Positions 20,731 through 60,605 of a stretch of 64,000 nucleotides of DNA are shown in pieces. The notes under the pieces were generated by a model. That model had not been told where the DNA came from and searched no databases. It saw only the letters and a program-made list of their open reading frames with translations. The translations under genes and the position numbers were made by a program. The DNA is taken from positions 372,001-436,000 of the forward strand of contig NW_024704753.1 of assembly GCF_018977255.1 (NCBI RefSeq), in the 5' to 3' direction. Origin of the DNA: Callorhinchus milii (lineage: Eukaryota). Position 1 is the stretch's first letter; each line of letters starts with the position of its first letter.

Positions 20731-20941
20731 TACAATACAATCTAGCCATGGTAGAAAGAGTCCACTTGTATTGGCATTAGTTACATGGTGTCATTTGAAG
20801 AGATAGCAATATTGAATTGATTCTGTTGACAATATATCACTTGTATCACTGTCACTACTCATTACTGTTAAATGTTTCTTGGAAGATTCACTAACTTTTT
20901 TTATATTAATTTCAATTTTAACAGAGCAAAGTGACAACACA

Positions 20942-22331
20942 ATGGCCTTCACAACAAGGCTATCAATATTAATATTTCTATTCAACACAAACATTCTTTG
21001 CCAAGTTGAATGTGATGATCCATTGCCGCCTCCTCCCCCTCCACAGTTTCGAACAAGTGCACAGTATCATTTCCCATACATACATCAATCGTTTCAATGT
21101 GCCAGTGAATGCCGTTGTTCACCATTCTTTCCTTTTGCCATGTACTGTGAGAGTCGGAAGCTAAAGTACATTCCCAATATCCCAGCAGGTACACACTATT
21201 TATACCTGCAGCACAATGAGATAGAAGCAGTACCCGAGAAGGCGTTCATCAATGCCACATCCCTTCAAGAAATCCACCTCAGTTACAACAAAATAAAATC
21301 TTCCATGATAGACAAAGGTGTATTTGGGAGGCTAAAATCCCTTGTTCATCTTCACCTGGAACACAACAAATTGGATAAAGTTCCAAGTCCTCTGCCAAGC
21401 TCACTTGAAAGACTTTTCTTAGGTTTCAACAAGATAAGCAAGCTGCCTGGGGACACTTTTCATGGATTGGTTAACATTACCATGTTGAATCTCTGCAATA
21501 ACCAACTCACCGATGGTTCCTTCAAGGGAAATATTCTTGCAAGAATGAAGAGCCTCATGCAGGTAAACCTATGTAACAACAAGCTGAAATCTATGCCAGC
21601 AGAACTCCCAGCCTCTCTTTTGCAGCTTTCAGTGGAAAACAACTCTATATCATCTCTCCCACCAAATTACTTCAAGAAAGTTCCACACCTCATCTCATTA
21701 AGGATGGCGCATAATAAACTGAAAGAAGTTCCATATGCTGTATTCAACCTCTCAAATCTGCTGGAGCTGAACATGGGGTACAACAAACTAAGTCAAGCCT
21801 TCTACATTCCCAGGCGTTTGGAACACTTGTACCTCAACCATAACCATTTTACAAGTATGAGAAATGTCCTATTATATTTTCAGTAATTAAGTGCCACAAT
21901 TTAAAAATATATAAAAATATAAGCAGCTTACTCCTTGCATTGCTCTATTTGCTTCACTTATAAGTAAAATACAAACATGAAGAGGCAATAACAAACAAAA
22001 ACGAGTGGCAGTGGTACATTTTTTAAACAAAAAATTCTATTGCAGATTTCTATTAATGTTTATTTTTTCCTCCCCAGGGTTTAATATTACACTGATGTGT
22101 CCTACAACTGATTTACAGAACCCAAAACAACTGACCTACATGCGAGTTGACAAAAATATGTTGACACGTAGGTTTGATGCGTTCCTGTTCGCTTGCTTCC
22201 CCCGGTTACAAGCTTTGGTTTATGGTGAACAGAATGTTGCACCAACTGCTGAACATCGAAGAGAGCCTCGACTGTTTGGGATGCCAGTCACATCACCCGA
22301 TGGAGAACCAGACAATCCTCTCCCTTACTAA
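20942..22331 (+). CDS. OMD: Class II SLRP osteomodulin/osteoadherin (~388 aa, 2 coding exons)
   Basis: Exons 20942-21854 and 22078-22331 (phase 1, GT-AG). Signal peptide, CX3CXCX9C (CASECRCSPFFPFAMYC), LRRs, C-terminal NITLMCP...LTYMRVDKN...FACFP...YGEQ matching OMD; lies between ASPN and OGN. Confidence 0.92.
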
Positions 22332-29065: not shown

Positions 29066-32000
29066 ATGAAGGGGCTATGTCCTGTAGTTCTTTTAGTTGT
29101 ATTTGCTGATATAGCATTCACAGCACCAGCTCACACTGAAGATCTATTTCATGTTTCTGATTTGGAAATGGATTTTGGTACAGAAACAAGTTACGAATAT
29201 CAGGATGAGCCACAGGAAATAAAGCAAGTAAAGGTAATGTAGCAAATTTAACATTTTGGGCATCAACAAACCTTTTATTTTATAAAGAACTGGGTAATTT
29301 AAATGACTACAACCAAAATAAATAAGGTCACTCCACACATGCAAAACTAATATTAGTGATTGTTAATACTGCAGTAAAACTCATAGTATGCTGTAAAAAT
29401 GCTTTGTATGAACCATACCATAAAGCACCTTTAAAAGAGTGATTAAACATAAAGCCAAATTAATTTTACCTATTCACTTCATTGAGTACTTCTTCAAAAT
29501 TGTTTGATAATAATATGAAATAATAGATTATTTGCTAGAATAACCATCGGATTTTAATTATAAGCAAGAACGATTGTAAAAAATGAGAGCAAAGCATGGT
29601 AGTTTACAACAAAAATATATTGTTTTCATTTATAAATGAATTTAAGATATCTTCTGGTGAAGAGATTAGCTTCAGTAATACAGCAGTTAAGTGATTACCT
29701 GGATACAAATTACATGCAGTAACCAACCATATACTGTACAATTCAATGCCTCATTTATATTAAATGTAACGAGTTGCCACCTAATATTGCTCGCTCGCAC
29801 TCCTATCTCAACCTCTCCACAGCCATCCTTCCACGCCTTTGTCACCTTGGTTAAATTTCTCCAATGCTCTCCTCGTCATCCTCCCTAGCTCCACCCTCCA
29901 CAGCCTTCAACTTATCCAATACTCTGCCACCCATATTCTCTCCTACACATTTATTACTGCAATCCTCACCAGCTTTCACTGGCAACAGATCGAATTTAAG
30001 ACCTCCAGATCCCTTTACAGCTTCCCCCTCCCTCCACCATCTCCTCCAGTTCTTTTATTTCTGCTGTGTCCTCCACTCTTCTGACTAGTCTATTGCTCAT
30101 TCCTCACTCTCTCTGCCCCACCATTGATGGCACTACAGCTTTGCTATGGAGCTCTCTCTCAAAATCCCTTCACCTGCTCCTCTCCTGGTCTTCGAAACCC
30201 TCTTCATAGAATCATACAGCAGAAAAAGAGGCCATTCGGCCCATCGAGTTTGTGCCAGCTCTTTGAATAGAGCAATTAATGTCAATCCCACTCCCCAGCC
30301 CTTTCCCCATAACCCTACAAACCCGTCCTCCTCAAATACCTGTCCACCGTGTTTTTAAAAGTTGTTACCGAATTGGCCTCCACCACCCTTTCAGGCAATG
30401 CATTCCAGGTTCTTAAAAACTCTTTGACCAAAGGTCAAAACCCTTAAGTTTCCCTTCCTTTTATCCTTGTTTAGTGTGAAGCACATCAAGACATTCGTCC
30501 TAAAGGAAAGACATTGTGCAGAGCAATTGCAAGTTGTTGCTGTATCATGAGCAGCCTATAACATTCTCATTAGCATGACTCACTTGTAAATTGCTCACCA
30601 AACCAGCTGTGCGCATTAATAGTTCACAATATAGCACTAAAGTTACTTAAACAATTTATATAGCATGTTTTATGTTAGGAGGATATCTCAAAGAGCTTGA
30701 ATTGGAAACCTCAATTTATTCAGAAGGCCCTAAAAGCCTAAACTAATACACAAGGACTGAAAATAATCTTCATCTCTAGGTTTTCACAACTATTGTAAAC
30801 GTAATCTAAAAATGTTATCCTCACTGTTAGCCATCAGTTTTCATAACAGGACAAAGCATTCCGTTTAATGTTCACTTTCCACCAGATAGATAAGTATTTT
30901 TTTATAAAATGGTTGTTTCTGTTGTTGAAAGCCAGAAGAAAGGGCCACTCCAGTTGTTGCTGCTAATGTGAACAGCGAACTCGAAACCACAAATCCAGAG
31001 GAAGATTCAAATTCTGAGGTCCCCGATGCTGGTGAGTGCTGTATACGTTCTACTGCTCACCTCCTCACTGCCACATATACAGCTTCCATTTATACACTGC
31101 AATTGGGACTTTGTAACTAGCAAATCATCCACCATCACCTGCTTTATGACACAATAAACAACAACAACAACAAAATTACATTTATAGAGCGCCTTTCACG
31201 TCGGGAGAACGTCCCAAGGCGCTGGACACAGCTTCCCATGGACAAGCTACATTCTGCAAAGGTGTATTCAATGTCCTTGGATGTTTTTTTCTCTTTCCTT
31301 TTCTTAGAGCCACTTAGTAAACCTGATGTCTGTTCTTTTCTTGCTCCATCAACCTCTCCACCCCTCAGCCCTTCATGCATATCTCTTTTCCCCCATTTTT
31401 ATTTTACTCTCACACAGTTTGGTTACATTTTCCTCTATGCTGAGGATATACTAGTCATGGCATTTCAAGAGCTCCTTCTACTAGAAGGTACATACTTCCT
31501 CAGATCTTGGTTACAAGAGACGTTTATACAGATTTTCAGGAACGAGGTCAGCCATACACAACTCAATGAAAATTATCTGTATTTCAGAAATGCCAACTTG
31601 CCTTCTGTGCGTCTGTCTAATTGGTTCTGTGTACTGTGAAGAAACCGACATTGAATCAATTCCTGTTTTGCCAAAGGAAACAGGATACCTCTATGCACGT
31701 TTCAACGAGATAAAAAAGGTCACTGTAAACAATTTTGCTGATATTAGTGAGTATTCTCTTCTATTTACTATAAGGTCCTGTAGATTTACTCTCCACAGAG
31801 CTAATGGTGAAAGACAATACAAGACAGGGAGTTACAAGCTTATTCCTGTTTGGAGTTTGCATATCTCAGCTACGGCAGCAATTGGTCTTTCACCTCTGGG
31901 CTGCTATGGGAAAATCAGCAAGGGCTGATTGCTATCCAGAGTCCCTTACTGAAAGTATGTGGGTGTGGATATCAGTGAAGACAGCACTTGATTGGATTGG

Positions 32001-42499: not shown

Positions 42500-43348
42500 A
42501 GAGAGTCAATCAAGAACATTTATTTCGCTGCCCACCATAGAGACTGACACTCCAGCGCAGCGCTTTGTTGGGGGTGGGGGGAAGCCATCCTTGGAACACT
42601 TGTCCCGTGTCCCCCCCGTCCCCGTCCCCCAGCACCAGCCAACGGGGGGTGGGGCGGCTCTCCCACTGTCCTTGGCCGCAGACACCCCCCACCCCACCCC
42701 CGGGTACAGTCCTCACTCACTCCATGGCCGCTGTGCGCCTACACGGTCACTGCACTCCACAGTACAGTACACACCGCGAGGGAGACATGTTGACGAGGCG
42801 CGGTATCGAATGTAAAGGTATCGTGCACCGGGGGGGGGGGGGGGCTGTGCACCGGGGTCGGGGCTGTGCACCGGGGTCGGGGCTGTGCACCGGGGTCGGG
42901 GCTGTGCACCGGGGGGGGGGGGGCTGTGCACCGGGGGGGGGGGGGGGCTGTGCACCGGGGGGGGGGGGGGGCTGTGCACCGGGGGGGGGGGGGGCTGTGC
43001 ACCGGGGGGGGGGGGGGGGGGCTGTGCACCGGGGGGCTGTGCACCGGGGGGCTGTGCACCGGGGGGGGGGGGCTGTGCACCGGGGGCTGTGCACCGGGGG
43101 GGGGGGGCTGTGCACCGGGGGGGGGGGGGGCTGTGCACCGGGGGGGGGGGGGGGGCTGTGCACCGGGGGGCTGTGCACCGGGGGGGCTGTGCACCGGGGG
43201 GGCTGTGCACCGGGGGGGGGGGGGGCTGTGCACCGGGGGGGGGGGGGGGCTGTGCACCGGGGGGGGGGGGGGGCTGTGCACCGGGGGGGGGGGGGGGGCT
43301 GTGCACCGGGGGGGGGGGGGCTGTGCACCGGGGGGGGGGGGGGCTGTG

Positions 43349-43427
<79 letters not shown>

Positions 43428-44450
43428 CTGTGCACCGGGGGGGTGCCGGGGCTGTGCACCGGGGGGGAGGGGGTGCCGGGGCTGTGTACCGGGCAGCTCT
43501 TACCCGGGTGACGGCGGCTGTTGATGGCTGTTTGAAAAGCGCGGGTCCCGCACCACGTGACGCGCCCAACTGCCGGTGCGCGAGCTCCCTCCGCGGACGG
43601 CTCCACTCAGCGGCTCGCGAGGAGGGGGGAGGAGGGAGAGTCCGCGGGGCTCAAATAGACATATACTTTCTGGCGTATAACGTTTACTGAGAGAGGAGTG
43701 CGGTGTGTGTATTGTTCACATCCTGGTCGGTGTTTTATGTCGATGGCTTGAAGCCCACAGGCCTGGACTGGGCTTGTGTTTAAAAAAATTCACCCCCCAC
43801 GGATGGTTGGGTCGGTGTTGCCAGTGCGTGGGGTCTCCGGCGAGAGGTGTGCGGGCGCCGGACCGTCAGGTGGGCCCCGGAGAGGCCGCGCGCTCGGGGT
43901 AAGGGGGGCTGCGGGGGGTTTCCTGGTGGGGAGGGGGTGTGGTGCGTGGAGAGGGGGTTCACACTTGAGCGGAACGCCGACGTTCCCCTGAAGGTCCGGA
44001 GGCCGCGCGGGTTGAAGTCGGCCTTCCCGCCGTGTGGCGCCCGCCCGCCCCGCGGCCTTGTTATCTCAAAGAGGTGCCCGAGCGGTGTGGGGGGGCGGGG
44101 ATGTGGGGGGTTAGCTGGGTGGGGTGTGTGGGGGCTGGGAGGGTGGGGGGGTGGCGGGGGTTGAAGAGCCGCCGGTGTAACGGCCCCAGTGGGTCACACT
44201 GCGGGTGGGAGCCCCGCGCCGGGAGGTTGAGCCTCAGCGTTGGATGCAGCGCCTTATCACGTCCTCTCGAGGCGTCTCCACCATCTGCTTTACTGTGGTT
44301 CTCACTGCAAAGTGTTTCTTCATTGTGTCTCTTGTGGGTGAAGGAATACGGCAGTCAGTTGCGGGTGAGCGACCGGTTTTATTTGCGGGCGCTCATTGTT
44401 GGCCTGGACACCGCGAGAAACTCCCGGTCTCCTCCAACAGTGCCACGGGA
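42500..44450. promoter_or_regulatory. CpG island / bidirectional CENPP-NOL8 promoter
   Basis: Sharp GC/CpG rise between divergent genes; E-box CACGTG at 43554-43559; TTTGAA (CHR-like) at 43531-43536 next to GCGCGGG; minus-strand donor GTGAGT at 42720. Confidence 0.75.
42822..43492. repeat. G-rich minisatellite (CTGTGCACC + variable G-run), ~28 units
   Basis: Direct reading: constant CTGTGCACC core (palindromic GTGCAC) separated by G runs of about 5 to more than 70 nt. Confidence 0.95.
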
Positions 44451-46141: not shown

Positions 46142-49100
46142 ATGGAGACAGACAAAAGTTTAAAGCGTGTATTTGTTGGAGGATTGCATCACACAGTCGC
46201 TGAAAGTGAAATCAAAGAAAGGTTTAGCAAGTTTGGAGATGTAATGAATGTGGAAATTATAATCAGGAAGGATGACAAAGGTAATGTTGATGTTTGCCCA
46301 TCATTACTGCACCATCACTAAGAGTGTAATTCAGATTAATGTTGTCTGTGAAGGAAAGTTCATTGCAATTTAACTATTAATAAGATATACTGGTCTTCCT
46401 CCCCTCCCTACTTTAAGGCCCTGTTTTATTGGTGATAGTCTTTGTGATCTGCGGGTTATAAATTGGGCTAGGATATTTGACTCCATTGGACCAGCCCTCT
46501 TTAAAGAATCCAAGCCCAGCCCATAGGAACCCTTGAGATACTACAAGTAATTGAGGAACCACTTATCCAAATAAGAAAAAATCCCTGGTTTGAGTAAATT
46601 CTAAGTTCACAGTAAAAGTAATAAAACAAAGTTTCACTCTAGCATTTCCTCTTTGAGTTGCCCAAATGGAGTATTATTTGAGACTGGAATACAAACATGT
46701 TTGTGTGACCATGTTCTGATTACCATGCTCTCTGATGTACAGCAACTTGCATTTATATAGCGCCTTTCACATCGAGTAGTGTCTTAGAGCATTGAATATT
46801 CAAGCTGTTGTAGTAACTGATTTCTAGTTTCTTATCGTCAGGAATGACTTAAGGTTTTACAAATTAATGTACATCTTGAAATTAACTCTTTGTAATTTTC
46901 AAATTATCTTTCCAGGAAATCCTGTGAAGACTTTCGGATATATTAATATGAGTTCTTCTGAAAAAGAGTTAAAAAATGTAGGTACAGTAAACCCCTCTAG
47001 ACTACTGGACTTCAGGTATCCGGAATTCAACCCGAGCCAGACCGGGTCCCAAAACCAAAAACAAAAGCCAACACCTCGCTCAGCAGCCCCCATGATCTCA
47101 CAGCTTCCCGCCTCAATGGCCTTGCTCTGGCATCCAGTGTCTGGGGATGAGTGACTTTTATTTAAGCAGTGGTAGAAATGCATTTACAGTGCCGGAAAAT
47201 GTATTATCAGCATTTACAGCACCCCATGTGCATTTTTTGCAATTTCCTGCAATGTAATTGCACTTAGCGGGAAATTCTGAATTGGATCTTACCCCCACCC
47301 ACACACATGCTTCCCGCCCCCACCATTGGCTGGCTGGGGTTTATCTGTATATATCTCCAGTTTTTAAAATCTACACATTTTGCTTTGCTATTGTGATCCA
47401 GAATTTCTTCCACATTTTTGTCTTAGTTGTCTTTCCACAGAGGGTGCATGATTATACAAAAATACATTTCAGTTAAAAATAAGGTAAATATAAAAGCATC
47501 TGCAGGCAAAGATTACTCCTGCTTGCCTCAAGGCTGCGGATCTAAACTGTTATTTCTGCTAGCACTTCTTCATGGGGTTTGTTAACTTGTGGACTACTCA
47601 GTGTTGGAGAATTCAGTATCACAAATGAAAACAATTTAGCTGCAGGATGTACCATGTGTGATTTTCAATTAAATTATTCAACAACTGAATCAACTGAGAT
47701 ATCCATGCATATCTTCTGCAGTTTTATTTGTTTTTGTTTTTAGGCATTTCACTTCTGAATAAATCAAATTGGAAAGGTGGGACACTACAGATCGAACTGG
47801 CCAAAGAAAGCTTTTTACATAAGTAAGTGGGCAGCACTTTTCACATTGGGAGGGCATCCCAAAGCGTTTGACAGGGTTTACTGTGGAGTGACTGTATTGG
47901 GACATCCTCGTGATGTGAAAGGCACTTTATAAATGTAATTTTTTCTTCTTGTATTTGTGGGCAAAGGCTGCAGCCCAAGTGCATACAGCAATGTCCCAAC
48001 TAATAGCCATGAAACAACTAACCAATTTTATTTTGGAGATTGTTAGCCAGGACACTGGGATTTCAGCATTTCATAATTTTCCATGAAAATTTTCCATCGA
48101 TTTTGTTCTGGATATCAGTTTGATATTTAGGGAGAAAGACTGATTTCAAATATAATTTATTATAGATGCTAAAGAATTTGTAAGTATGCTTTTTATCTCA
48201 GTTTTCTATATGATGCCAGTAATTTCCATCCCATGCGTTGTCTATTGCTTGGCATTGAGAAAATGTTTTATGAAATTCCATAGCTTAATATTCCATAGGC
48301 ATCGTTGCAGTAAAATTTAAATAAATCCAATTTTTATTTCAATTTTGAAAAAAGATTTTTGACCTGGGGTACTTAAAAAAAATGTTTGGTTATTCTAGAG
48401 AGCAAGGCCAGAAATGCTGCTTATTCTTTGCCAGTTGGACCATTTGTCTTGCAGCTAATTTAAATTTGTGGAAAATGCTGATACTGGTCAGTTTTAAGAA
48501 AACCAATGAATTAATTTTAATTTTTTTCCACAATCTTGCATATATAGCAAAATAGCTGTAAGGCTAAAGCTATTTGGAATTTCAAGGCCTAAGACCCTTG
48601 GTATGCTCAAAATAAATTACAACCTTTTCACTTTACTTTTCATTTGATGACAAAAACTCAAGAGGCGTGTATTTTACAGGTAAACTCTTAATTTTCATGT
48701 AGGCTTGTTCAGGAGAGACAGGATGCAGCTAAAAATAAAAACAAACCACAAGTGGACAGCAAAGCACAAGTGGTAGAGTCTCTGAAGAAGGCTGGTGTTG
48801 AGAACTTTCACCTTAAATCAGCAGTGCCAGGAACGGAAATATCTGGACACAAGGTGAGCGGTAGTTGCATAAGCGTATTATCAATACTAATTGTTTTACC
48901 AGGAGTTCCGCATTGAAATAATTGGCTTTGGTTAATCTGCTATTTACAAATGTAAGTGGAGTGATCATTGCAGGTTTGTGCCTCTAGTGAGATTCTCACT
49001 CTCTGGCTATAATCCTGGAGAGGAGCAATGGAGCAGCTGTGAGGGAAAAATGGAGGTGAAGTTCATGTCAATCACTTGCATATAGTCCAGTAATAACAGA

Positions 49101-52100
49101 GGCTAAGGAGCAGGTCACCTGGCCATTTCTTCAGCCGGAAAGTGGTGCAATAGTGAGAGATTGAAATGAACAGTGCTGAACCAACCCCCACAGATAAGGC
49201 ACTAGAACTGAACTGATAGCCTAGAGGTTTTGACATCTTGTGATTTCACTCACCCATGAGACTACTCTCTTCTATTTACCACGTCCACTAACATACTTTG
49301 TATTAACTAACCCACTAACTGGTTCTACCTCTGTGATGTAAGTATTATCCAAAAAAACTGACTGGATTGTCTTGGTAATTTTAAATCTGCTCGAGCCCCA
49401 ACACCTGACTGTTCAACGCTTTGGAACGTCCTCCTGACGTGAAAGGCGCTCTATAAATGTCATTTTGTTGTTGTTAAATCATTTTCATGTACCAGTTGAA
49501 GCATTTGAAGTGATTAATGGTGACTAATTTTTATTTTGTTTCATCAGAACTGGGTTGTGAGTAAATTTGGGAGAGTATTGCCCATTCTTCATCTCAGACC
49601 AAATGGCCAGAACAGAATATCCTTTTATCAGAGTAAGTTGCAATAATTGTGTATATAGAAAACATGCTTAGAAACCCGTTGTCCGAAAGGGAAGTACAGT
49701 ACTTTTAAAATGATCAAAACATTCCTTAATTCAGTTTACCTTATAAAATGTGATCCTTCCAAATATTGTCATAACATCAAGAAACTAGATAATTCATCGG
49801 AGTTAGAAACTCAAACTCCAATTACTGAACTTACCTGGAAAATGGAAGAGCGAGATGATGAAAGCAGTAAGAAAAGGCGAGGGGATTTCACTGCTTCTAA
49901 ACGCACTTTCAAAAGCAGGATATCAGTCAATGATTGCAATAAGGGCCATTCCAGCGCCTCTTGCTTTGAGAGCAATGTATCCCCAAAGAAAATGTCTTCA
50001 GCTGCGGTAAAATATAATGCTCAAAGAGAATCTGCTAAAGGTCAGTTGGAGGTTCTGAAGGGAAAGGAATTAATCGCCTTGAAATCTGACTCCGTAAACA
50101 GAAACGTTAGCACCAGTACTAATAAAAGGAATGTCTGGTCCAAAGCACGAATGGCACATAATGATTCTGAGTCTGAGGAAGAATTAAAGTTGTTGATTGA
50201 AACTGAGAAAAATAAAATGAAAGAACTTGGCCAGATGACAGCAGCCACACAGGATGTGTATCACTTAGAGGTAGTTGGTGAGGACTACATTCCAAAATAC
50301 AATTCTCATTGGTCATTAAATGTTTCAAAGAAGGCAGGCTCCAAAGCCAGTGGGACTGATCAAAGAGCAGGCACAGATGATGGTGAGTATGATTCAGCAG
50401 ACACTGATGAAATAATAGCTGCTAAAAGGACGCCAGCCAAAATAATACCCAAGATGCAATCTACTGGAGAAGAAAAGTCTATGACAAAAAGTAATCTTCA
50501 GAAAGAGGCGTGTGAGTTAATTAGCGACAGCGTGAAGAGTCTGAAGAAGTTGATTCAGAATCCAGTTTGGAATCTGATTATGAAGAAATGATGAACAACT
50601 GTTATAGAATTGACCTATCGCTTGCTGACCTTGAGCAGCTCGTGAATAATTCCTCCAAATCTGAAACAGAAGGCAGTGAAGATAGTTCACTGGAGCCATC
50701 CACTTCAGGTATTGAGATTCCCCACAGTCTGCAAGCCGTGACAATGAATACTGCGTCACATTCTGCTAAGTCAGCTATTCAAAGTGAAGAGAGCAGTGAG
50801 GATGAAATCACAGAAAACAAACGGCTGAATGTTGTGCAGTTGCCTCTTTTAGAGGTACAAAGTGCCTCTCAGTGGTCCAGGAAAAACGTCCTAATAAAGC
50901 AGAGCAAACCACTGATCATTTTGTACTGAAAGAAAAGAGGAAAATCTCCCAAAAGTCTTGCGATGATTCTACAAGTGCACCTGTTCTCAAAAAGAAGAAA
51001 GTTAATAAGATAAATACTGTGTCTGACTCTGACAGCGACATGGATTGCAGTTACAAACCACCACCGTTTAGAGGAACTAAATCTCTTCAGATCACACTCA
51101 CTGCTGACCCTCCCAATCAGGTGCTTAACCCTACTGAAAGTGAAGGAAAGTCATGCACCTCCAATTTACTGAACCATAATGGAAGAAGTGATTCCAAAGA
51201 AGTTGAGAGTGGAAAGGAAACAATAGTTCCTGTAAATTCAAGAGATTCTCAGAGACTCAAAGCCACACCTGCCCAAGCTATAAACAAAATTGTTACGGCC
51301 AATTCTTTAAAGAGTGAGAATGGCACAGTTTCTCACAGCACTGAGACTGCGGCTGGTTGTGTCGTCTCAAGAATGTCTGGAAACTTGGATAAACATTCAC
51401 TGGACAATCAAAAAAGACTGGCTGCTTTGCAACAGAGGAAAGAAGAGAACAAGATGCAAAAGTCTCTCATTCAGGGAGCCCTTTCCAATGTGGTATGTTG
51501 GGGTTTGGGGGGAAAAATATTAAATTCAAAGATAATCAGCCCCTTCCAAATGTAATATTCATTCACCTGCTTCTTGAGTAGTCAGGCAAGCATATATATG
51601 TACACAAGATTGGTTTGGATGGAATTGGCCCTGTGGGCTATTTGAGAAGGTAGTTTCTACCATCAAATTAATTCTATTAGTGTTTATTTACTCATTCCCC
51701 GGGGAAAAAATCCAGTTGTGCTTGAGGTATAAAAGATTGTTTGAAACCTTCCAAGAATATATGGTTTGCTTATCAGATGGATCAGCAAGCACTTTTGTAG
51801 GCAACCAGTGCTGAGTAATCTCTTGGATCCATTCTGTCTGTTGCTGTCTTTTCTGACAGTTAATAATAATCCCTACAAAACAATAATAAATTGGTCATTT
51901 TCAATCCACGGCTGTTTGTGGGACACTGTTGTACGCAATTGGCTGCCGCGTTTCTCCCACAAATATACGGTCAATTCACTGTCCAGTATATTCTGTGAAG
52001 CGCTTTGAGACGTCGAGAAGACGTGAAAAGCACTATTATCAAATGCAACGATTGTTATTATTAATCCCCAAAATAATGGATTTTAATGTTCCCAGCTGGA

Positions 52101-55100
52101 GAAGTTTGTATGTGCAGCTTGAAAGGGGAGGAATTTAACTTTGGTAAAATTCTTTGTTAACTGAACACTAGTTTACCAGAAAAGTAACTGGAAAAACCTA
52201 AATAAATATCCAACCCTTTTCCTTCCTCCACTGATCCTGAAGGAAAACTCACACAGAGAGATTGCACAATGGTAAATGATGGTGACAGCAGTCATATTCC
52301 CGTGCAGATCTCCTCTGTAAAGTGACGCATTGCAGTATCGTTGCTCCCCTCCCCCAACAAAAGTCTGGACAAAATCGTGTAATATTTTGAACTGGATATT
52401 TCCACAGGACAGTCCGAAGTCTGGCTATGGGAATCACATTGTCTTTGATTCAGAAGAAGAGAGTGAAAATGAGCAAAATGAAGTGCAGAACAAGGTACTG
52501 CTCGAAGATGAAGATGATTCTGCTGATGGTTCTGAAGAGGAAGATAATGCTGAAGAGAAAGATGGAGAACCACCAGCAGAAGAAAGTGGAAGATCACAAA
52601 GAAAACTGCCTGGTGCCTCAAAAGTAAGCGTCTTTCTTGTGTGTTGACTGAAGTGAAAATCAATGTCTGAATAAATTGCATTACTGTGCCAGTCCTTTGT
52701 GTTGGCATTATGTACTTCCAGGTTAGCACTGTGTGACTGATAGAAATTAAAACTAATATGCTCATACTTTTCCATTTTTCTATATTTCCAGGAGTTTAAA
52801 ATCAAAACTATTGGAAAGTTGTTTGACAGTAGTGAGGATGAAGGCATGAATATCGATGATGAAAATCATGATGATATATTCAAGATTAAGCCACAGTTTG
52901 AAGGAAAAGCTGGTCAGAAGGTGAGCAATGGGCCCAGTTTAAGAACTGCCCTGGTGAATCAATTTATTTTCTTTGATGCATAAAGGCTTTATAATTTATA
53001 TCTACATTCATCCAAGAATTCCTATTAAAAAGAGCCTCCTTCAAATGAGCTGGCCATGCTTTCTTTGAATTGAGGTGGTTAGCTTTGGGAAGGTGACCCA
53101 ACATACTTCAATCAAACATAATCTACCCTTGATAGAAGGGGATTCCTTCTCAGGGAATATGCAGAAACCTGAAGAGCAGAGCCTGAGACCTGGACAACAT
53201 TGTTGATGTGGAGACATGAGAATAGGTCACCTGCATGCATAACCCACCTGCCTGAACAACTCATGAGGAACTTAAAGGGCATTTTATTTTAATAAATCTT
53301 TTTTTTTGTAGTTGTTGGCTTTACAATCACGATTTGGGACAGATGAACGATTTCGAATGGATGAACGTTTTTTGGAAAATGACGAGGAAAGTTCAGGTGA
53401 GCATTATGGTTTTTTATGTATAGGATCGTTTTTACTCCAGCACAAGTCACTCATTATGTTGAGCAGAGGATTAAAGAAAAGTTGATGATTGGGTGCTCTT
53501 GGAACATTTTTCATTTGAAGTAACACCTTAAACAATAAATGTAATGCTTTTCTTACAGAAGAGGCAGATACAGGTGAGAAGCAGACTGCTGAGAAAGATG
53601 AGCTGGCTGTTGAGAAGAAGAGAAATCTAGACATTTTACAAGGTCTTCTGCAAGTCAGTGTGAAAATGCCCGAACTCAAGAAAGAACAGGCGAAAGCTAA
53701 GAAATTTAGGTATGTAATAGTCTATCTAGTCAATGGGAGTGTTTGGAAGGGCTTGCTCCAGTGTTTTTTCTCTGTCAAAGTTTGTCTCCAAATCGCGCTG
53801 TTGTCCTTTCAATTAACTGAACAACATACAGCTACACAACTTTGTTGTATCTGGTTTGTTTTTTTAAATGTAAAGTGAGTAATTTTCCCATGCTTGCTCC
53901 TTTCAGAGATGTCTCTGCTCTGCACTATGATCCTACACGAGAAGACCATGCAGTATTTGAAACCAAAGTAGAAACCAAGAAACAAAGGTAATTCTGATTA
54001 AAGTAAAGGTACATTACATCACTCATCAACAGCATCAGAACTCAAGTATACTTAGATTCTTTTTCTTTGTCCCGCTCTTTCTTTAAAATTGGCAAAAGCA
54101 CAACGATGTGTCTGTGTGCGTACACGTGTGTGTGTGTGTGTGTGTGCACCCTGCATGCATGCAGGCATTGTCCCTTTGTTTAATTTGACCAAAGATCTTT
54201 TGACTTAAAGTTTCTGTATTACTGGACAATAATCAAAAAGTTTAATGTTAACTGTGTTAGACAGATTTAGCTCTGTAGCTAATGAATCCTTTCCTAAATT
54301 AACCAGCAAGGCAGAAAGAAGGAAAATAAGAGAAGCGGTTGAAAAGCTTCCAGAAGTGTCCAAAGAAACATACTTTGATGTTGCTGTGAATTTAAAAGAA
54401 ATCTTCAGTTCAAGTACTGAAGACAAAGGAAACACTGAGGAGAAGAAGAAAGAAGATGATCAGCATCAAAAAGAGGCTGCAAAATCACATGAAGATTCAA
54501 GTGCCCAGCAGATAGCGAGTGTCATTCCTAATAATACTCCAAAGGAAGAATCCACGGGATTTAAGTTTTCATTCTTTGGCACGGAGGCCACGGTTACTGC
54601 TCCGAAAGAAGGTAAAATAAATGATGTGGCTTCCTTGAGGCTACTGTTGGTTCTGTTACCAGAAAGGCTTTATAGACATCACACAGCAATAAGTTTGCTG
54701 ATTTGACATTTTATTTATTTGTTGTAGATATTTATGCTTAACAACAAAATTACATTTGTATAGTGCCTTTCACGTCAGGAGGACGTCTCCCAAGACACTG
54801 AACAATCAGTGTTTCGGACCAGAGGTTAAGTCATTTCAATTTTGGAGAATGGAACATTTTTTTGAGACCCAAGTGTCTGCTTGAATCAGTGCCAGGCATG
54901 GAACAGGGCAGATACAATTGAGGCTGCCTCTGCTACACCTAGTCGTTGTTCTGGAACACTGGCTTAAGGAAATCATGCCATAATTGGCAATTTTCAGGGC
55001 AGCAATCAGGATAAGGAGACCTGGCATAACACACAACTAATTGTGATGCATGCAAATCAATTGTTCCCTATTTAGAGGAGCAGATGATACCTGGATCTAA

Positions 55101-58435: not shown

Positions 58436-59059
58436 CTAACCAGACGAATCCCGTCGCTGTAAAGCAGTGGAGGAGCCGCACAGAGCGGAAGCCGCGGCTC
58501 CTGTCCTGTGAGTGACGGGAGAGGGAGAGATGACTGAGGCAGAGCTTTGTGCAGAAAAACAACTCGAAGCTGCCGACGGTTGCGATTTAATGACTTCGGT
58601 CCCACATTGAAGTGCATCAGATTATGATCTCTCTCTGGAGCCGAATTTGCAGATGTAAAAAGCTCGAAGAAGATTTTCTCCAAAACGCTTTAAATGATTC
58701 CCCTTTTCCACCATCTTTGAAAGTGAACGACTGGTGTAAAAAGTAAATGTTTTTCGGCGGCGGCTCAGGGGACCTGACGGCAAAAAGCTACTAGTTTTAT
58801 AGAAACTAAAAGCTGACGGAATTAATCACAGGTTATATATAGTCTTCAGACTGTAGCTCCAAACTGCACTAAACAGTTTATAGAAAGCAAAAAAACACAA
58901 GAATACAATCACTAAAAAAAAGGGTTTTATTAACAAATATACAAAATATTGGTCACAACTGCCATACATTGTTGTTGAGCAGTGCCCCCCCCGCCACGAA
59001 GCCTGGATTGATTTACACATTCCCCTGCAACCGAGTTTATAAACCCCCCAATGTCACCA

Positions 59060-59515
59060 TCACACACACAGCCGGGGGGGGCACACACACACACAGCCAG
59101 AGGGGGCACACACACACACAGCCCGGGGGGGGGGCACACACACACACGGGGGGGGGGCACACACACACAGCCAGAGGGGGCACACACACACACAGCCCGG
59201 GGGGGGGGGGGGGGGCACACACACACACACACACGGGGGGGGGGGGGGCACACACATACACAGCCAGAGGGGGGGGGCACACACACACACAGCCAGAGGG
59301 GGGGGCACACACACACACAGCCAGAGGGGGGGCACACACACACACACACAGCCCGGGGGGGGGGTCTCACCCCCACACACAGCTCGGGGGGGGGTCTCAC
59401 CCCCACCCACAGCCCGGGGGGGGGTCTCACCCCCACCCACAGCCCGGGGGGTCTCACCCACAGCCCGGGGGGGGGGTCTCACCCCACCCACAGCCCGGGG
59501 GGGGGGTCTCACCCC
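59060..59515. repeat. Compound minisatellite in the 3' UTR of the HEXIM-like gene
   Basis: Units (CA)n-CAGCC-(G)n grading into TCTCACCCC-CACAGCCC-(G)n. Confidence 0.92.
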
Positions 59516-60094
59516 TCACACCAGGGCGCTCCAGAAAGCCGCGAAGTCGCGCTGCATGAAGTGTTCGCTCTCAATCACATCGTCTTCCGATGGGAAGTAC
59601 TGCAAACTCTGCTCCTGGTCGATCGGCCCCAAGAACCTGATACGGAACCGGTTCTCCTCCCCGGAGGGAGACGCGGCGCCGTCCAGAGCTCCGCGGGCGT
59701 TCTCCAGCACTCCCAGACAGGCGTCTATGTCCAGGTCCAACTCCACCGCGTCAGCGCCGCTCTCACCGCCGGTGGAATCCGACCTCATGTGCATCAACTG
59801 GTACTTCTCGTGCATCAGGAACTGGTTGGTGTTGCGGGGCGCCCGGTTGCCCCGCAGGTTGACCGGCCGCAAGGCCACCCCTTGGGGGCGGGCGGACGAT
59901 GCCTGTGGTCCACGGCCGCCCCCCCCGACCCTCGGGATTCTCCCGAACTCTGCCCTTCGCCGCCGCCGGTGCCAGCGAGGCTGACCCCCGGCCCCTCGGG
60001 GCGGCGCCGCTCCGCTCCTGCAGCCCGGTTTGCCCACGTCCGAGCGCCCTTCCCCGGCCTCCCACTGGGCAGCCGCCGCTCTGCTGCCGGACAT
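59516..60094 (-). CDS. Intronless HEXIM/CCER1-related protein (192 aa from first in-frame ATG)
   Basis: ATG at 60094 (AGGATG); WHRRRRR basic patch, LRPVNLRGNRAPRNTNQFLMHEKY, acidic region, SEHFMQRDF. TATAAAAG upstream (60518-60511) and AATAAA downstream (58931-58926) on the same strand. The ORF track's start at 60136 is a GTG. Confidence 0.8.
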   Translation of the reverse strand: MSGSRAAAAQWEAGEGRSDVGKPGCRSGAAPPRGAGGQPRWHRRRRRAEFGRIPRVGGGGRGPQASSARPQGVALRPVNLRGNRAPRNTNQFLMHEKYQLMHMRSDSTGGESGADAVELDLDIDACLGVLENARGALDGAASPSGEENRFRIRFLGPIDQEQSLQYFPSEDDVIESEHFMQRDFAAFWSALV

Positions 60095-60479: not shown

Positions 60480-60605
60480 CGCAATGAGAGGCGTTCGCTC
60501 CCCCCACAGCCTTTTATACCCCCCCCCCACGGTCCCCCCCCCACGGTGCCCGCCCCCTCCCACGGTCCCCCCCCCCCACACGGTCCCCGCCCCCCCAATC
60601 AGACT
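60480..60605 (-). promoter_or_regulatory. Core promoter of the HEXIM/CCER1-like gene
   Basis: TATAAAAG at 60518-60511 on the minus strand, C-rich CCACGGTCCCC repeats, CCAAT at about 60595, within a CpG island. Confidence 0.6.

What the first reader, a model, noticed from the sequence alone, without database searches (positions are those of the whole stretch)
59516..60094. Truncated HEXIM-like protein (PYNT changed to PRNT, no cyclin-T coiled coil): candidate uncharacterised 7SK/P-TEFb modulator
Seen: an intronless 192-aa ORF with TATA box and polyA signal. Its motif order is basic HRRRRR, APRNTNQFLM, an acidic linker, SEHFMQRDF, then stop. Established: HEXIM1/2 have KHRR (7SK binding), APYNTTQFLM (CDK9 inhibition), an acidic region and SEFLQRDF, followed by a coiled coil for dimerisation and cyclin T binding. 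Here the inhibitory Tyr is Arg and the protein ends where the coiled coil would start. Inference: it could bind 7SK or P-TEFb without inhibiting CDK9, acting as a decoy or competitor of HEXIM. I recall no such gene between NOL8 and IARS1 in mammals.
Basis: partly seen in the sequence, partly recalled or inferred. Interest (0 to 1): 0.82.

Follow-up and report, generated by a model that had tools for sequence, protein, structure and literature searches.

The report
Conserved short HEXIM-like CCER1 paralog gene
This is a real, ancient vertebrate gene for a small disordered protein, a slow-evolving sister of the sperm factor CCER1, which carries the short motifs that HEXIM proteins use to bind the transcription kinase P-TEFb; its function has never been tested.

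Summary
The 192-aa ORF (59516-60094, minus strand) and its motif order are confirmed, as are a TATAAA upstream and an AATAAA downstream.

It is not a truncated HEXIM. It is the cartilaginous-fish ortholog of a gene annotated elsewhere as "uncharacterized protein wu:fb55g09 / CCER1-like" (Pfam CCER1, PF15482). Best hits are shark and ray proteins of 190-191 aa (E 6e-53 to 1e-47).

The short form, and a non-Tyr residue at the HEXIM Tyr position, hold across the whole family:
- 0 of 206 motif-bearing relatives have Tyr there.
- 137 of 139 type-A relatives carry the C-terminal motif and end a median of 5 residues after it.

A tree splits the family into a slow type A (this gene) and a fast type B (true CCER1). 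Each holds a cartilaginous fish and a coelacanth; lampreys root the tree.

The HEXIM likeness is real but weak. The window ORF scores below Pfam's HEXIM cut-off (E 0.007). A lamprey member scores above it (35.3 vs 29 bits). The conserved F-x4-F matches, by spacing and by a recalled motif, HEXIM1 F262/F267, which are needed for cyclin T1 binding.

Binding to P-TEFb or 7SK and a decoy role are untested. No run on record as RNA holds the gene. The scan noted the CCER1 link before on this window (s1-904341).

The parts
59516..60094 (-). Single-exon coding sequence, 192 aa, type-A CCER1-family protein (ortholog of 'wu:fb55g09')
59954..59974 (-). Basic patch W41-H-R-R-R-R-R47. W41 and R46 are kept in at least 90% of 20 orthologs. 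Possible nuclear-import or RNA-binding element.
   Evidence: the role is inferred
59813..59872 (-). Family core L75-RPVNLRGNRAPRNTNQFLM-94, the HEXIM 'PYNT'-type motif with Arg87 in the Tyr position. This copy lacks the 5 residues RAPGM present in all 19 other aligned orthologs.
59684..59731 (-). Conserved middle motif D122-IDACLGVLENARGAL-137, a predicted helix (123-139, pLDDT about 61-66). Also seen in lamprey (DLDGYSRALERARGG). No counterpart noted in HEXIM.
59579..59602 (-). Conserved Q165-YFPSEDD-172 acidic motif
59531..59569 (-). C-terminal motif S176-EHFMQRDFAAFW-188 inside a confidently predicted helix (170-191, pLDDT 90-95). F179 and F184 are invariant. Trp188 stands where 132 of 137 relatives have Cys.
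   Evidence: the match to HEXIM1 F262/F267 rests on spacing, on Pfam model columns and on a recalled HEXIM1 motif
60512..60518 (-). TATAAAA, candidate TATA box 418 nt upstream of the ATG
   Evidence: use not shown
60519..60597 (.). G-rich 14-19-nt tandem units (3.4-4.5 copies) directly upstream of the TATA box
58926..58931 (-). AATAAA, candidate polyadenylation signal 585 nt past the stop
   Evidence: use not shown
59061..59521 (.). Composite 25-31-nt tandem repeats (G runs, CA runs) that abut the stop codon and would fill most of the 3' UTR

Best explanation
The ORF is a real, conserved, single-exon protein-coding gene. It is the cartilaginous-fish ortholog of the vertebrate 'wu:fb55g09 / CCER1-like' gene, called type A here. 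Type A is the slow-evolving sister of CCER1 (type B), and both descend from a lamprey-like ancestor.

The protein is mostly disordered. It carries, in HEXIM's order:
- a basic patch;
- a P-x-N-T-x-Q-F-L-M peptide;
- an acidic stretch;
- an F-x4-F peptide in a terminal helix.

My reading is that the CCER family derives from, or shares an ancestor with, the central part of HEXIM.

Inferred mechanism, with no experimental step shown: the protein acts in the nucleus as a monomer that contacts P-TEFb. The F179/F184 peptide would contact cyclin T and the PRNT peptide would contact CDK9. It lacks the dimerising coiled coil and both HEXIM tyrosines (Y203, Y271). It would therefore modulate or compete for P-TEFb rather than inhibit it as HEXIM does.

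My odds: real conserved gene 0.95; common ancestry with HEXIM about 0.7; any P-TEFb contact about 0.3; decoy role about 0.12. The confidence given here is for identity plus HEXIM relatedness.
For: Orthologs:
- 223 hits at E<=0.01. The best are Scyliorhinus, Hemiscyllium and Pristis proteins of 190-191 aa at 53-57% identity and 99% coverage.
- 50 columns are invariant across 20 species from sharks to birds.

Family:
- A type-A profile finds only 29 clusters at E<=0.001 among 1.84 billion representatives. The 14 weakest that I read all carry the CCER core.
- In a tree of 27 rows, type A has support 86/82 and type B 94/90. The window groups with two sharks and a ray at 100/99.

HEXIM link:
- Window ORF: E 0.0071, model 37-110.
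- Callorhinchus type-B paralog: E 7.8e-6, 26.6 bits, model 37-119.
- Lamprey P0139: 35.3 bits against a cut-off of 29, while the type-A profile also hits it at 1.4e-9.
- 19 of 23 members match HEXIM at E<=0.1.

Papers, passages read:
- HEXIM1 202-PYNTTQFLM-210 binds and inactivates CDK9 (PMC12901311).
- F262, F267 and H275 are needed for cyclin T1 binding. [quoted passage not shown]
- Mammalian CCER1 is a single-exon gene (PMC10713660).
Against: - The window ORF is below Pfam's cut-off for both CCER1 (21.8 vs 27 bits) and HEXIM (17 vs 29 bits).
- 0 of the 29 clusters found by the type-A profile at E<=0.001 is a HEXIM.
- Four searches of solved chains, which by my recollection include the HEXIM1 cyclin-T-binding domain, found no HEXIM1 at E<=10. 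The queries were the A1 profile, the A2 profile, lamprey P0139 and the P0134 C-terminus. A fifth, with the window ORF at E<=1, found none either.
- I could fetch no true HEXIM sequence, so no profile-profile test was run.
- P0135 and P0146 gave no HEXIM hit.
- The similarity rests on short motifs in a disordered protein (mean pLDDT 56.7; Atlas model 0.51) and could be convergent.
- The residue at the Tyr203 position varies (R77, K46, Q6, L6, E3, M1 in type A), so Arg there is not a designed switch.
- No holder run is on record as RNA.
- This copy departs at 6 columns invariant in the other 19 orthologs.
Confidence: 0.65

Rival explanations
1. It is a CCER1-family disordered nuclear protein that works as reported for mouse CCER1: self-associating condensates that affect chromatin and histone marks. 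It would have no contact with P-TEFb or 7SK. The HEXIM likeness would be only a relic of distant ancestry.
For: Family membership is firm. Mouse CCER1 forms nuclear condensates and raises Tnp/Prm transcription; the passages searched held no word of P-TEFb, CDK9, 7SK or elongation (PMC10713660). The protein is mostly disordered.
Against: Type A lacks the glutamate-rich coiled coil that the CCER1 paper ties to self-assembly. The most strongly conserved parts of type A are exactly the HEXIM-like peptides. A grass carp ortholog is reported as upregulated in the muscle transcriptome, not in testis (PMC13361329).
Confidence: 0.3
2. The motifs shared with HEXIM are convergent short linear motifs, or dock on another kinase/cyclin pair, and there is no common descent.
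For: Only about 10 plus 6 residues are shared. HMMER against solved chains and against 1.84 billion representatives finds no HEXIM.
Against: Three elements stand in the same order with similar spacing. The Pfam HEXIM model aligns colinearly over 37-110/119 in 4 of the 11 proteins whose tables I saw. The lamprey member passes Pfam's HEXIM cut-off over the basic region plus motif (model 9-55). Mammalian CCER1 and this ORF both have single-exon coding regions; HEXIM1/2 have too, by my recollection.
Confidence: 0.2
3. In this lineage the gene is decaying (relaxed constraint, perhaps driven by GC-biased gene conversion) and is no longer functional.
For: There are 6 departures at columns invariant in the 19 other orthologs, against 0-1 for any other row. 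They include a 5-residue loss next to the core motif. Trp188 is unique among 137 relatives. GC3 is 0.82 in a window of 0.41 GC. The Pfam CCER1 score is below the cut-off, while the 5 other type-A orthologs scanned singly pass it.
Against: The frame is intact and full length, with no stop or frameshift. All 50 all-invariant columns are by definition kept here. The end branch is 0.31, against 0.49 for coelacanth. The sequence is held by 14 runs of 4 studies.
Confidence: 0.08
4. It is a chance ORF in a GC-rich CpG island.
For: Several overlapping long ORFs exist on both strands, and the region is 65-75% GC.
Against: Only this frame has homologs, 223 of them, at E down to 5.8e-53.
Confidence: 0.01

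Closest known systems
'Uncharacterized protein wu:fb55g09' / 'CCER1-like' of sharks, rays, bony fishes, coelacanth, amphibians, squamates and birds (type A)
   Same: Same length class (about 180-230 aa), same motifs in the same order, and the same abrupt end after FMxRDFxxFC. Identity to shark and ray proteins is 53-57%.
   Different: This copy lacks RAPGM before the core. It has Ala/Ala/Cys at three otherwise invariant Ser/Ser/Tyr columns, and Trp for the usual Cys188.
Mammalian CCER1 (C12orf12), Pfam PF15482 (type B)
   Same: Shares the core LRPVNxxGxRAP(GMRAP)RNT[TN]QF[LI]M and a single-exon gene. Human CCER1 lies in the 12q21.33 interval with EPYC, KERA, LUM and DCN (PMC3997350), and this gene lies beside class II and class III SLRP genes.
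   Different: CCER1 is about 400 aa with a glutamate-rich coiled coil and is testis-specific. It lacks the middle and C-terminal motifs: 58 of 67 type-B/lamprey rows have none. It evolves much faster, with branches of 1.3-1.5 against 0.04-0.67.
HEXIM1/HEXIM2 (Pfam PF15313)
   Same: A basic region, P-x-NT-x-QFLM, an acidic stretch and an F-x4-F peptide stand in the same order. P, N, T, Q, F, L and M of the PYNT block are invariant here.
   Different: Tyr203 is Arg. The position I recall as Tyr271 is Trp (Cys in relatives; Tyr in lamprey and in the Callorhinchus type-B paralog). There is no coiled coil. There is one short basic patch instead of two arginine-rich motifs. Pfam scores are below the cut-off.
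C. elegans Hexim homologue
   Same: It resembles human HEXIM1 only in three short sequences (basic region, PYNT, N-terminus of the dimerisation domain), yet it binds its cyclin T (PMC4227133). This shows that such weak likeness can go with conserved function.
   Different: It keeps a dimerisation domain, according to that paper. I did not see its sequence.

Membership tests
CCER1 family (Pfam PF15482), type-A orthogroup 'wu:fb55g09' | Significant full-length homology to members that pass the Pfam cut-off | tested here: met
   E 5.8e-53 to P0002, which itself scores 43.3 bits against a cut-off of 27.
CCER1 family (Pfam PF15482), type-A orthogroup 'wu:fb55g09' | Own score at or above Pfam's gathering score | tested here: not met
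   21.8 bits against 27. The shortfall coincides with the 5-residue loss in the core. I file the ORF by orthology, not by this score.
CCER1 family (Pfam PF15482), type-A orthogroup 'wu:fb55g09' | Core motif LRPVN..G.RAP..[RK]NT[NT]QF[LI]M | tested here: met
   Residues L75-M94; the columns are invariant.
CCER1 family (Pfam PF15482), type-A orthogroup 'wu:fb55g09' | Placement inside the type-A clade with other cartilaginous fishes | tested here: met
   100/99 with two sharks and a ray. The type-A clade has only 86/82 support.
CCER1 proper (mammalian type B) | Glutamate-rich coiled-coil C-terminal half | tested here: not met
   The protein ends at residue 192. Only three short helices are predicted.
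HEXIM (Pfam PF15313) | Score at or above Pfam's gathering score | tested here: not met
   17 bits against 29, E 0.0071.
HEXIM (Pfam PF15313) | PYNT motif with its Tyr | tested here: not met
   PRNT here. 0 of 206 motif-bearing relatives have Tyr.
HEXIM (Pfam PF15313) | Bipartite arginine-rich basic region that binds 7SK | tested here: inconclusive
   There is one patch, WHRRRRR, weakly conserved. RNA binding is not testable here.
HEXIM (Pfam PF15313) | Aromatic F262/F267 peptide N-terminal of the dimerisation domain | tested here: inconclusive
   F179 and F184 are invariant with the same spacing, and the Pfam alignment reaches model 110. The peptide alone is not detectable against solved chains.
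HEXIM (Pfam PF15313) | C-terminal coiled coil for dimerisation and cyclin T binding | tested here: not met
   Absent.
HEXIM (Pfam PF15313) | 7SK-dependent inhibition of P-TEFb | not testable with these tools
   Needs biochemistry.

The most novel reading that the evidence does not exclude
The whole CCER family, including mammalian CCER1 (which mouse sperm chromatin compaction and male fertility need), is a vertebrate offshoot of HEXIM. It keeps the cyclin-T and CDK9 docking peptides but has lost both inhibitory tyrosines and the dimerising coiled coil. These proteins would therefore compete with HEXIM for P-TEFb and act as positive regulators of transcription elongation. Type A would be the ancestral somatic form, lost in mammals.
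Probability: 0.12. Interest if true: 0.85.

Novelty: new variant of a known kind. Interest (0 to 1): 0.6.

Why it matters
HEXIM1/2 are the only known protein inhibitors that hold P-TEFb on 7SK RNA. A second, vertebrate-wide family with the same docking peptides but without the inhibitory tyrosines or the dimer would be a new class of P-TEFb ligands.

It would also give mouse CCER1 a concrete, testable mechanism. CCER1 is reported to raise Tnp/Prm transcription (PMC10713660). No paper in the searched library holds CCER1, C12orf12 or CCER2 together with HEXIM.

If the link fails, this remains an ordinary, already annotated, uncharacterised conserved gene.

Tried and rejected
Fetching true HEXIM sequences for a profile-profile test failed.
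- The alignment query was swamped: only the 8000 candidates sharing most words were scored, 52 hits, all CCER or lamprey.
- The motif-region query of lamprey P0139 found 3 proteins among 18 candidates, all lamprey.
- All three searches of that tool are used.

Solved structures gave nothing useful. Four searches at E<=10 (A1, P0139, a P0134 C-terminal stretch, A2) and one at E<=1 (window ORF) gave no HEXIM1 chain. The only hits were chance ones (40S S8, a designed PPR, PstS).

The Atlas search, leaving out PF15482, gave no usable feature hit and only TM<0.35 structure rows. The Atlas gave nothing for the NOL8-like exon either.

I could not name NOL8 or IARS1 by any tool. Pfam found nothing in five long ORFs, only an RRM exon.

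dN/dS was not computed, because no ortholog DNA could be fetched.

The lamprey cluster names 'PAK4-inhibitor INKA2-like' belong to sequences that do not align with the CCER-like member (26-27% identity, no motif). I dropped that lead.

A downstream exon that would add a coiled coil was considered (GT after the stop). I rejected it because 137 of 139 relatives end in the same place.

Supplements are closed. Supplemental Table 1 and Figures 5 and 8 of bioRxiv 10.1101/2023.02.19.529146 list 'HEXIM-like sequences' and might include CCER-type proteins. I could not see them.

Full report
OBSERVATION. The ORF lies on the minus strand from ATG 60094 to TGA 59518-59516 and encodes 192 aa. ATG 60094 is the first in-frame ATG, with A at -3. 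Two out-of-frame ATGs lie in the putative leader. A TATAAA(A) stands at 60518-60512. The only AATAAA between 58500 and 59516 on this strand is at 58931-58926. The gene sits in a CpG island (CpG o/e 0.88, GC 0.65, GC3 0.82, against a window GC of 0.41). Tandem repeats of 25-31 nt run from 59061 to 59521 and abut the stop codon.

WHAT IT IS. The protein has 223 relatives at E<=0.01 among 1044 candidates. The best are 'uncharacterized protein wu:fb55g09' of Scyliorhinus canicula (E 5.8e-53), Hemiscyllium ocellatum (1.8e-52) and Pristis pectinata (9.8e-48). These are 190-191 aa long, at 53-57% identity and 99% coverage. Coelacanth, bowfin, gar, many teleosts, geckos and birds follow, and most carry the precomputed Pfam label PF15482 (CCER1). 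Amphibian members also exist (Discoglossus, Pleurodeles, Xenopus, Pelobates).

In an alignment of 20 of these, 50 columns are invariant, and all 20 sequences end about 8-18 residues after FMxRDF. The short end is therefore the family's normal form, not a truncation.

FAMILY STRUCTURE. A profile of the 20 sequences, run against 1.84 billion representatives, found only 29 clusters at E<=0.001. I read the 14 weakest. All carry LRPVNxxGxRAPGMRAPRNTTQF[LI]M. By name they include CCER1 of a caecilian and a turtle cluster, unnamed or hypothetical proteins of a newt, a lizard and unnamed Logan contigs, a second Callorhinchus milii protein (P0134, 204 aa), a second coelacanth protein (P0135) and a lamprey protein (P0139, 242 aa).

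A maximum-likelihood tree was built from 27 rows and 210 columns, rooted on two lamprey rows.
- Type A: 14 rows, support 86/82.
- Type B, true CCER1: 11 rows, support 94/90.
- Each clade holds a cartilaginous fish, a coelacanth and tetrapods.
- The window protein is sister to two sharks plus a ray (100/99), as expected of a holocephalan.
- Type A end branches are 0.04-0.67. Several type B end branches are 1.3-1.5, and the tool flags them as long.

The rows were my own pick from the stored proteins, and the 86/82 support for type A is moderate. The lamprey protein has the core, the middle motif (DLDGYSRALERARGG) and the terminal FMERDFAAVY. Type A therefore keeps the ancestral layout. Tetrapod CCER1 lost the middle and terminal motifs: 58 of 67 type-B/lamprey rows have no terminal motif.

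THE HEXIM LINK: FOR.
- Pfam puts HEXIM second for the window ORF (E 0.0071, 17 bits, residues 84-186 on model 37-110 of 142).
- Of 23 family members scanned, 22 match CCER1 and 19 match HEXIM at E<=0.1.
- Of 10 scanned singly, 8 match HEXIM. P0134 is the best at E 7.8e-6 (26.6 bits, model 37-119). P0135 and P0146 do not match.
- The lamprey protein scores 35.3 bits, above HEXIM's cut-off of 29 (model 9-55). The type-A profile also finds it at 1.4e-9, so it bridges the two families.

From papers, passages read:
- HEXIM1's conserved 202-PYNTTQFLM-210 binds and inactivates CDK9. A basic region precedes it, and an acidic region and a coiled coil (254-359) follow it (PMC12901311).
- Mutating PYNT abolishes inhibition by a HEXIM1-Tat chimera (PMC6245832).
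- F262, F267 and H275, in an unstructured peptide N-terminal of the dimerisation domain, are needed for cyclin T1 binding (PMC4227133).
- The same paper says human and nematode Hexim resemble each other only in the basic region, PYNT and that N-terminal peptide.

Type A has all three elements. F179 and F184 are invariant and five residues apart, like F262 and F267. The numbering in the paper fits it. AlphaFold2 with the alignment gives a mostly disordered chain (mean pLDDT 56.7) with helices at 89-105, 123-139 and 170-191; the last has pLDDT 90-95.

THE HEXIM LINK: AGAINST.
- The window ORF is below the curated cut-off for both families.
- No HEXIM is among the 29 clusters.
- Four searches of solved chains at E<=10 and one at E<=1 found no HEXIM1.
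- I could not fetch a HEXIM sequence, so I could not run hhalign.
- The shared letters are few, and the protein is disordered.
- The Tyr203 position is R77, K46, Q6, L6, E3, M1 in type A and R58, H8, K1 in type B and lamprey. It is never Tyr and not tightly kept.
- The position that I take to match Tyr271 (listed as crucial in the legend of Figure S8 of bioRxiv 10.1101/2023.02.19.529146) is Cys in 132 of 137 type-A proteins and Trp only here. It is Tyr in the 8 lamprey rows and in Callorhinchus P0134.

THIS COPY. Against the 19 other aligned orthologs it departs at 6 columns that are invariant in all of them. Three of these come from the loss of RAPGM; the others are S to A twice and Y to C. 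Any other row departs at 0-1 such columns. The frame is intact, and tblastn finds one copy only in the window.

EXPRESSION. Fourteen runs of one organism in four studies hold 70-100% of the sampled words. Ten are only guessed to be RNA (contig sets of 25-270 million letters). Four look like whole-genome DNA (886-963 million letters). None is on record as RNA. A grass carp ortholog is listed as 'uncharacterized' and upregulated in the muscle transcriptome (PMC13361329). That 'wu:' names come from zebrafish EST clones is recalled.

CONTEXT. The window also holds:
- a class II-type SLRP ORF (20879-21886+, LRRNT plus LRR);
- an ORF with a C-x2-C-x-C-x6-C cluster typical of class III SLRPs (31566-31928+; the class rule is recalled);
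- an RRM exon with long Ser/acidic ORFs that fit NOL8 as I recall it.

Human CCER1 lies in the 12q21.33 interval with EPYC, KERA, LUM and DCN (PMC3997350). It is not proven, because synteny in other species could not be read.

MECHANISM.
- Shown: a conserved gene, its family, its motifs and its disorder.
- Inferred: nuclear location (basic patch); docking on cyclin T through F179/F184 and on CDK9 through P86-M94; action as a monomer; lack of HEXIM-type inhibition.

I put P-TEFb contact at about 0.3 and the decoy role at about 0.12. The main rival is a CCER1-like condensate or chromatin role without P-TEFb.

NOVELTY. The gene is annotated but uncharacterised. No paper in the library holds CCER1 with HEXIM (0 papers), nor HEXIM with C12orf12, CCER2 or the long name (7 papers held two terms, none of them with HEXIM). 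A search for 'HEXIM-like/HEXIM3/homolog/paralog/related' gave 6 papers. I read the passages of three, and none describes this family. 'fb55g09' occurs in one paper.

Noticed in passing
window 60519-60597: Three to four and a half tandem copies of a 14-19-nt G-rich unit (GGGGACCGTGG-like on the minus strand) stand directly upstream of the TATAAA. They may be a promoter element or G-quadruplex-prone DNA.
   Followed up: partly
window 59061-59521: A composite tandem array (periods 25, 30, 31 and 74; G runs and CA runs) starts right at the stop codon and would make up most of the 3' UTR.
   Followed up: partly
window 20879-21886 (+) and 31566-31928 (+): A class II-type small leucine-rich proteoglycan ORF (LRRNT plus LRR_8, E 1.7e-35) and an ORF with a class III-type cysteine cluster. 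This mirrors the human KERA/EPYC neighbourhood of CCER1.
   Followed up: partly
window 46142-46318 (+), 49710-51555 (+), 54245-54706 (+): An RRM exon (RRM_1, E 2.9e-7) followed by long Ser/Glu/Lys-rich ORFs without a Pfam match. They look like NOL8 by recollection, but no tool named them.
   Followed up: partly
window 42565-43690: About 1.1 kb of G/C-rich simple repeats gives long ORFs on both strands (GGGGAVHRG... and PPPPGAQP...). It may be the CpG-island promoter shared by the RRM gene and a gene on the other strand.
   Followed up: no
P0139 cluster (lamprey): The 90% cluster of the lamprey CCER-like protein also lists proteins named 'PAK4-inhibitor INKA2-like' that do not align with it (26-27% identity, no motif). 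This looks like a clustering or gene-model oddity.
   Followed up: yes
P0134 (Callorhinchus milii) and 8 lamprey rows: These members keep a Tyr four residues after the ..DF/NF motif, the position I take for HEXIM1 Tyr271. Type A has Cys there, and tetrapod CCER1 has lost the motif.
   Followed up: partly
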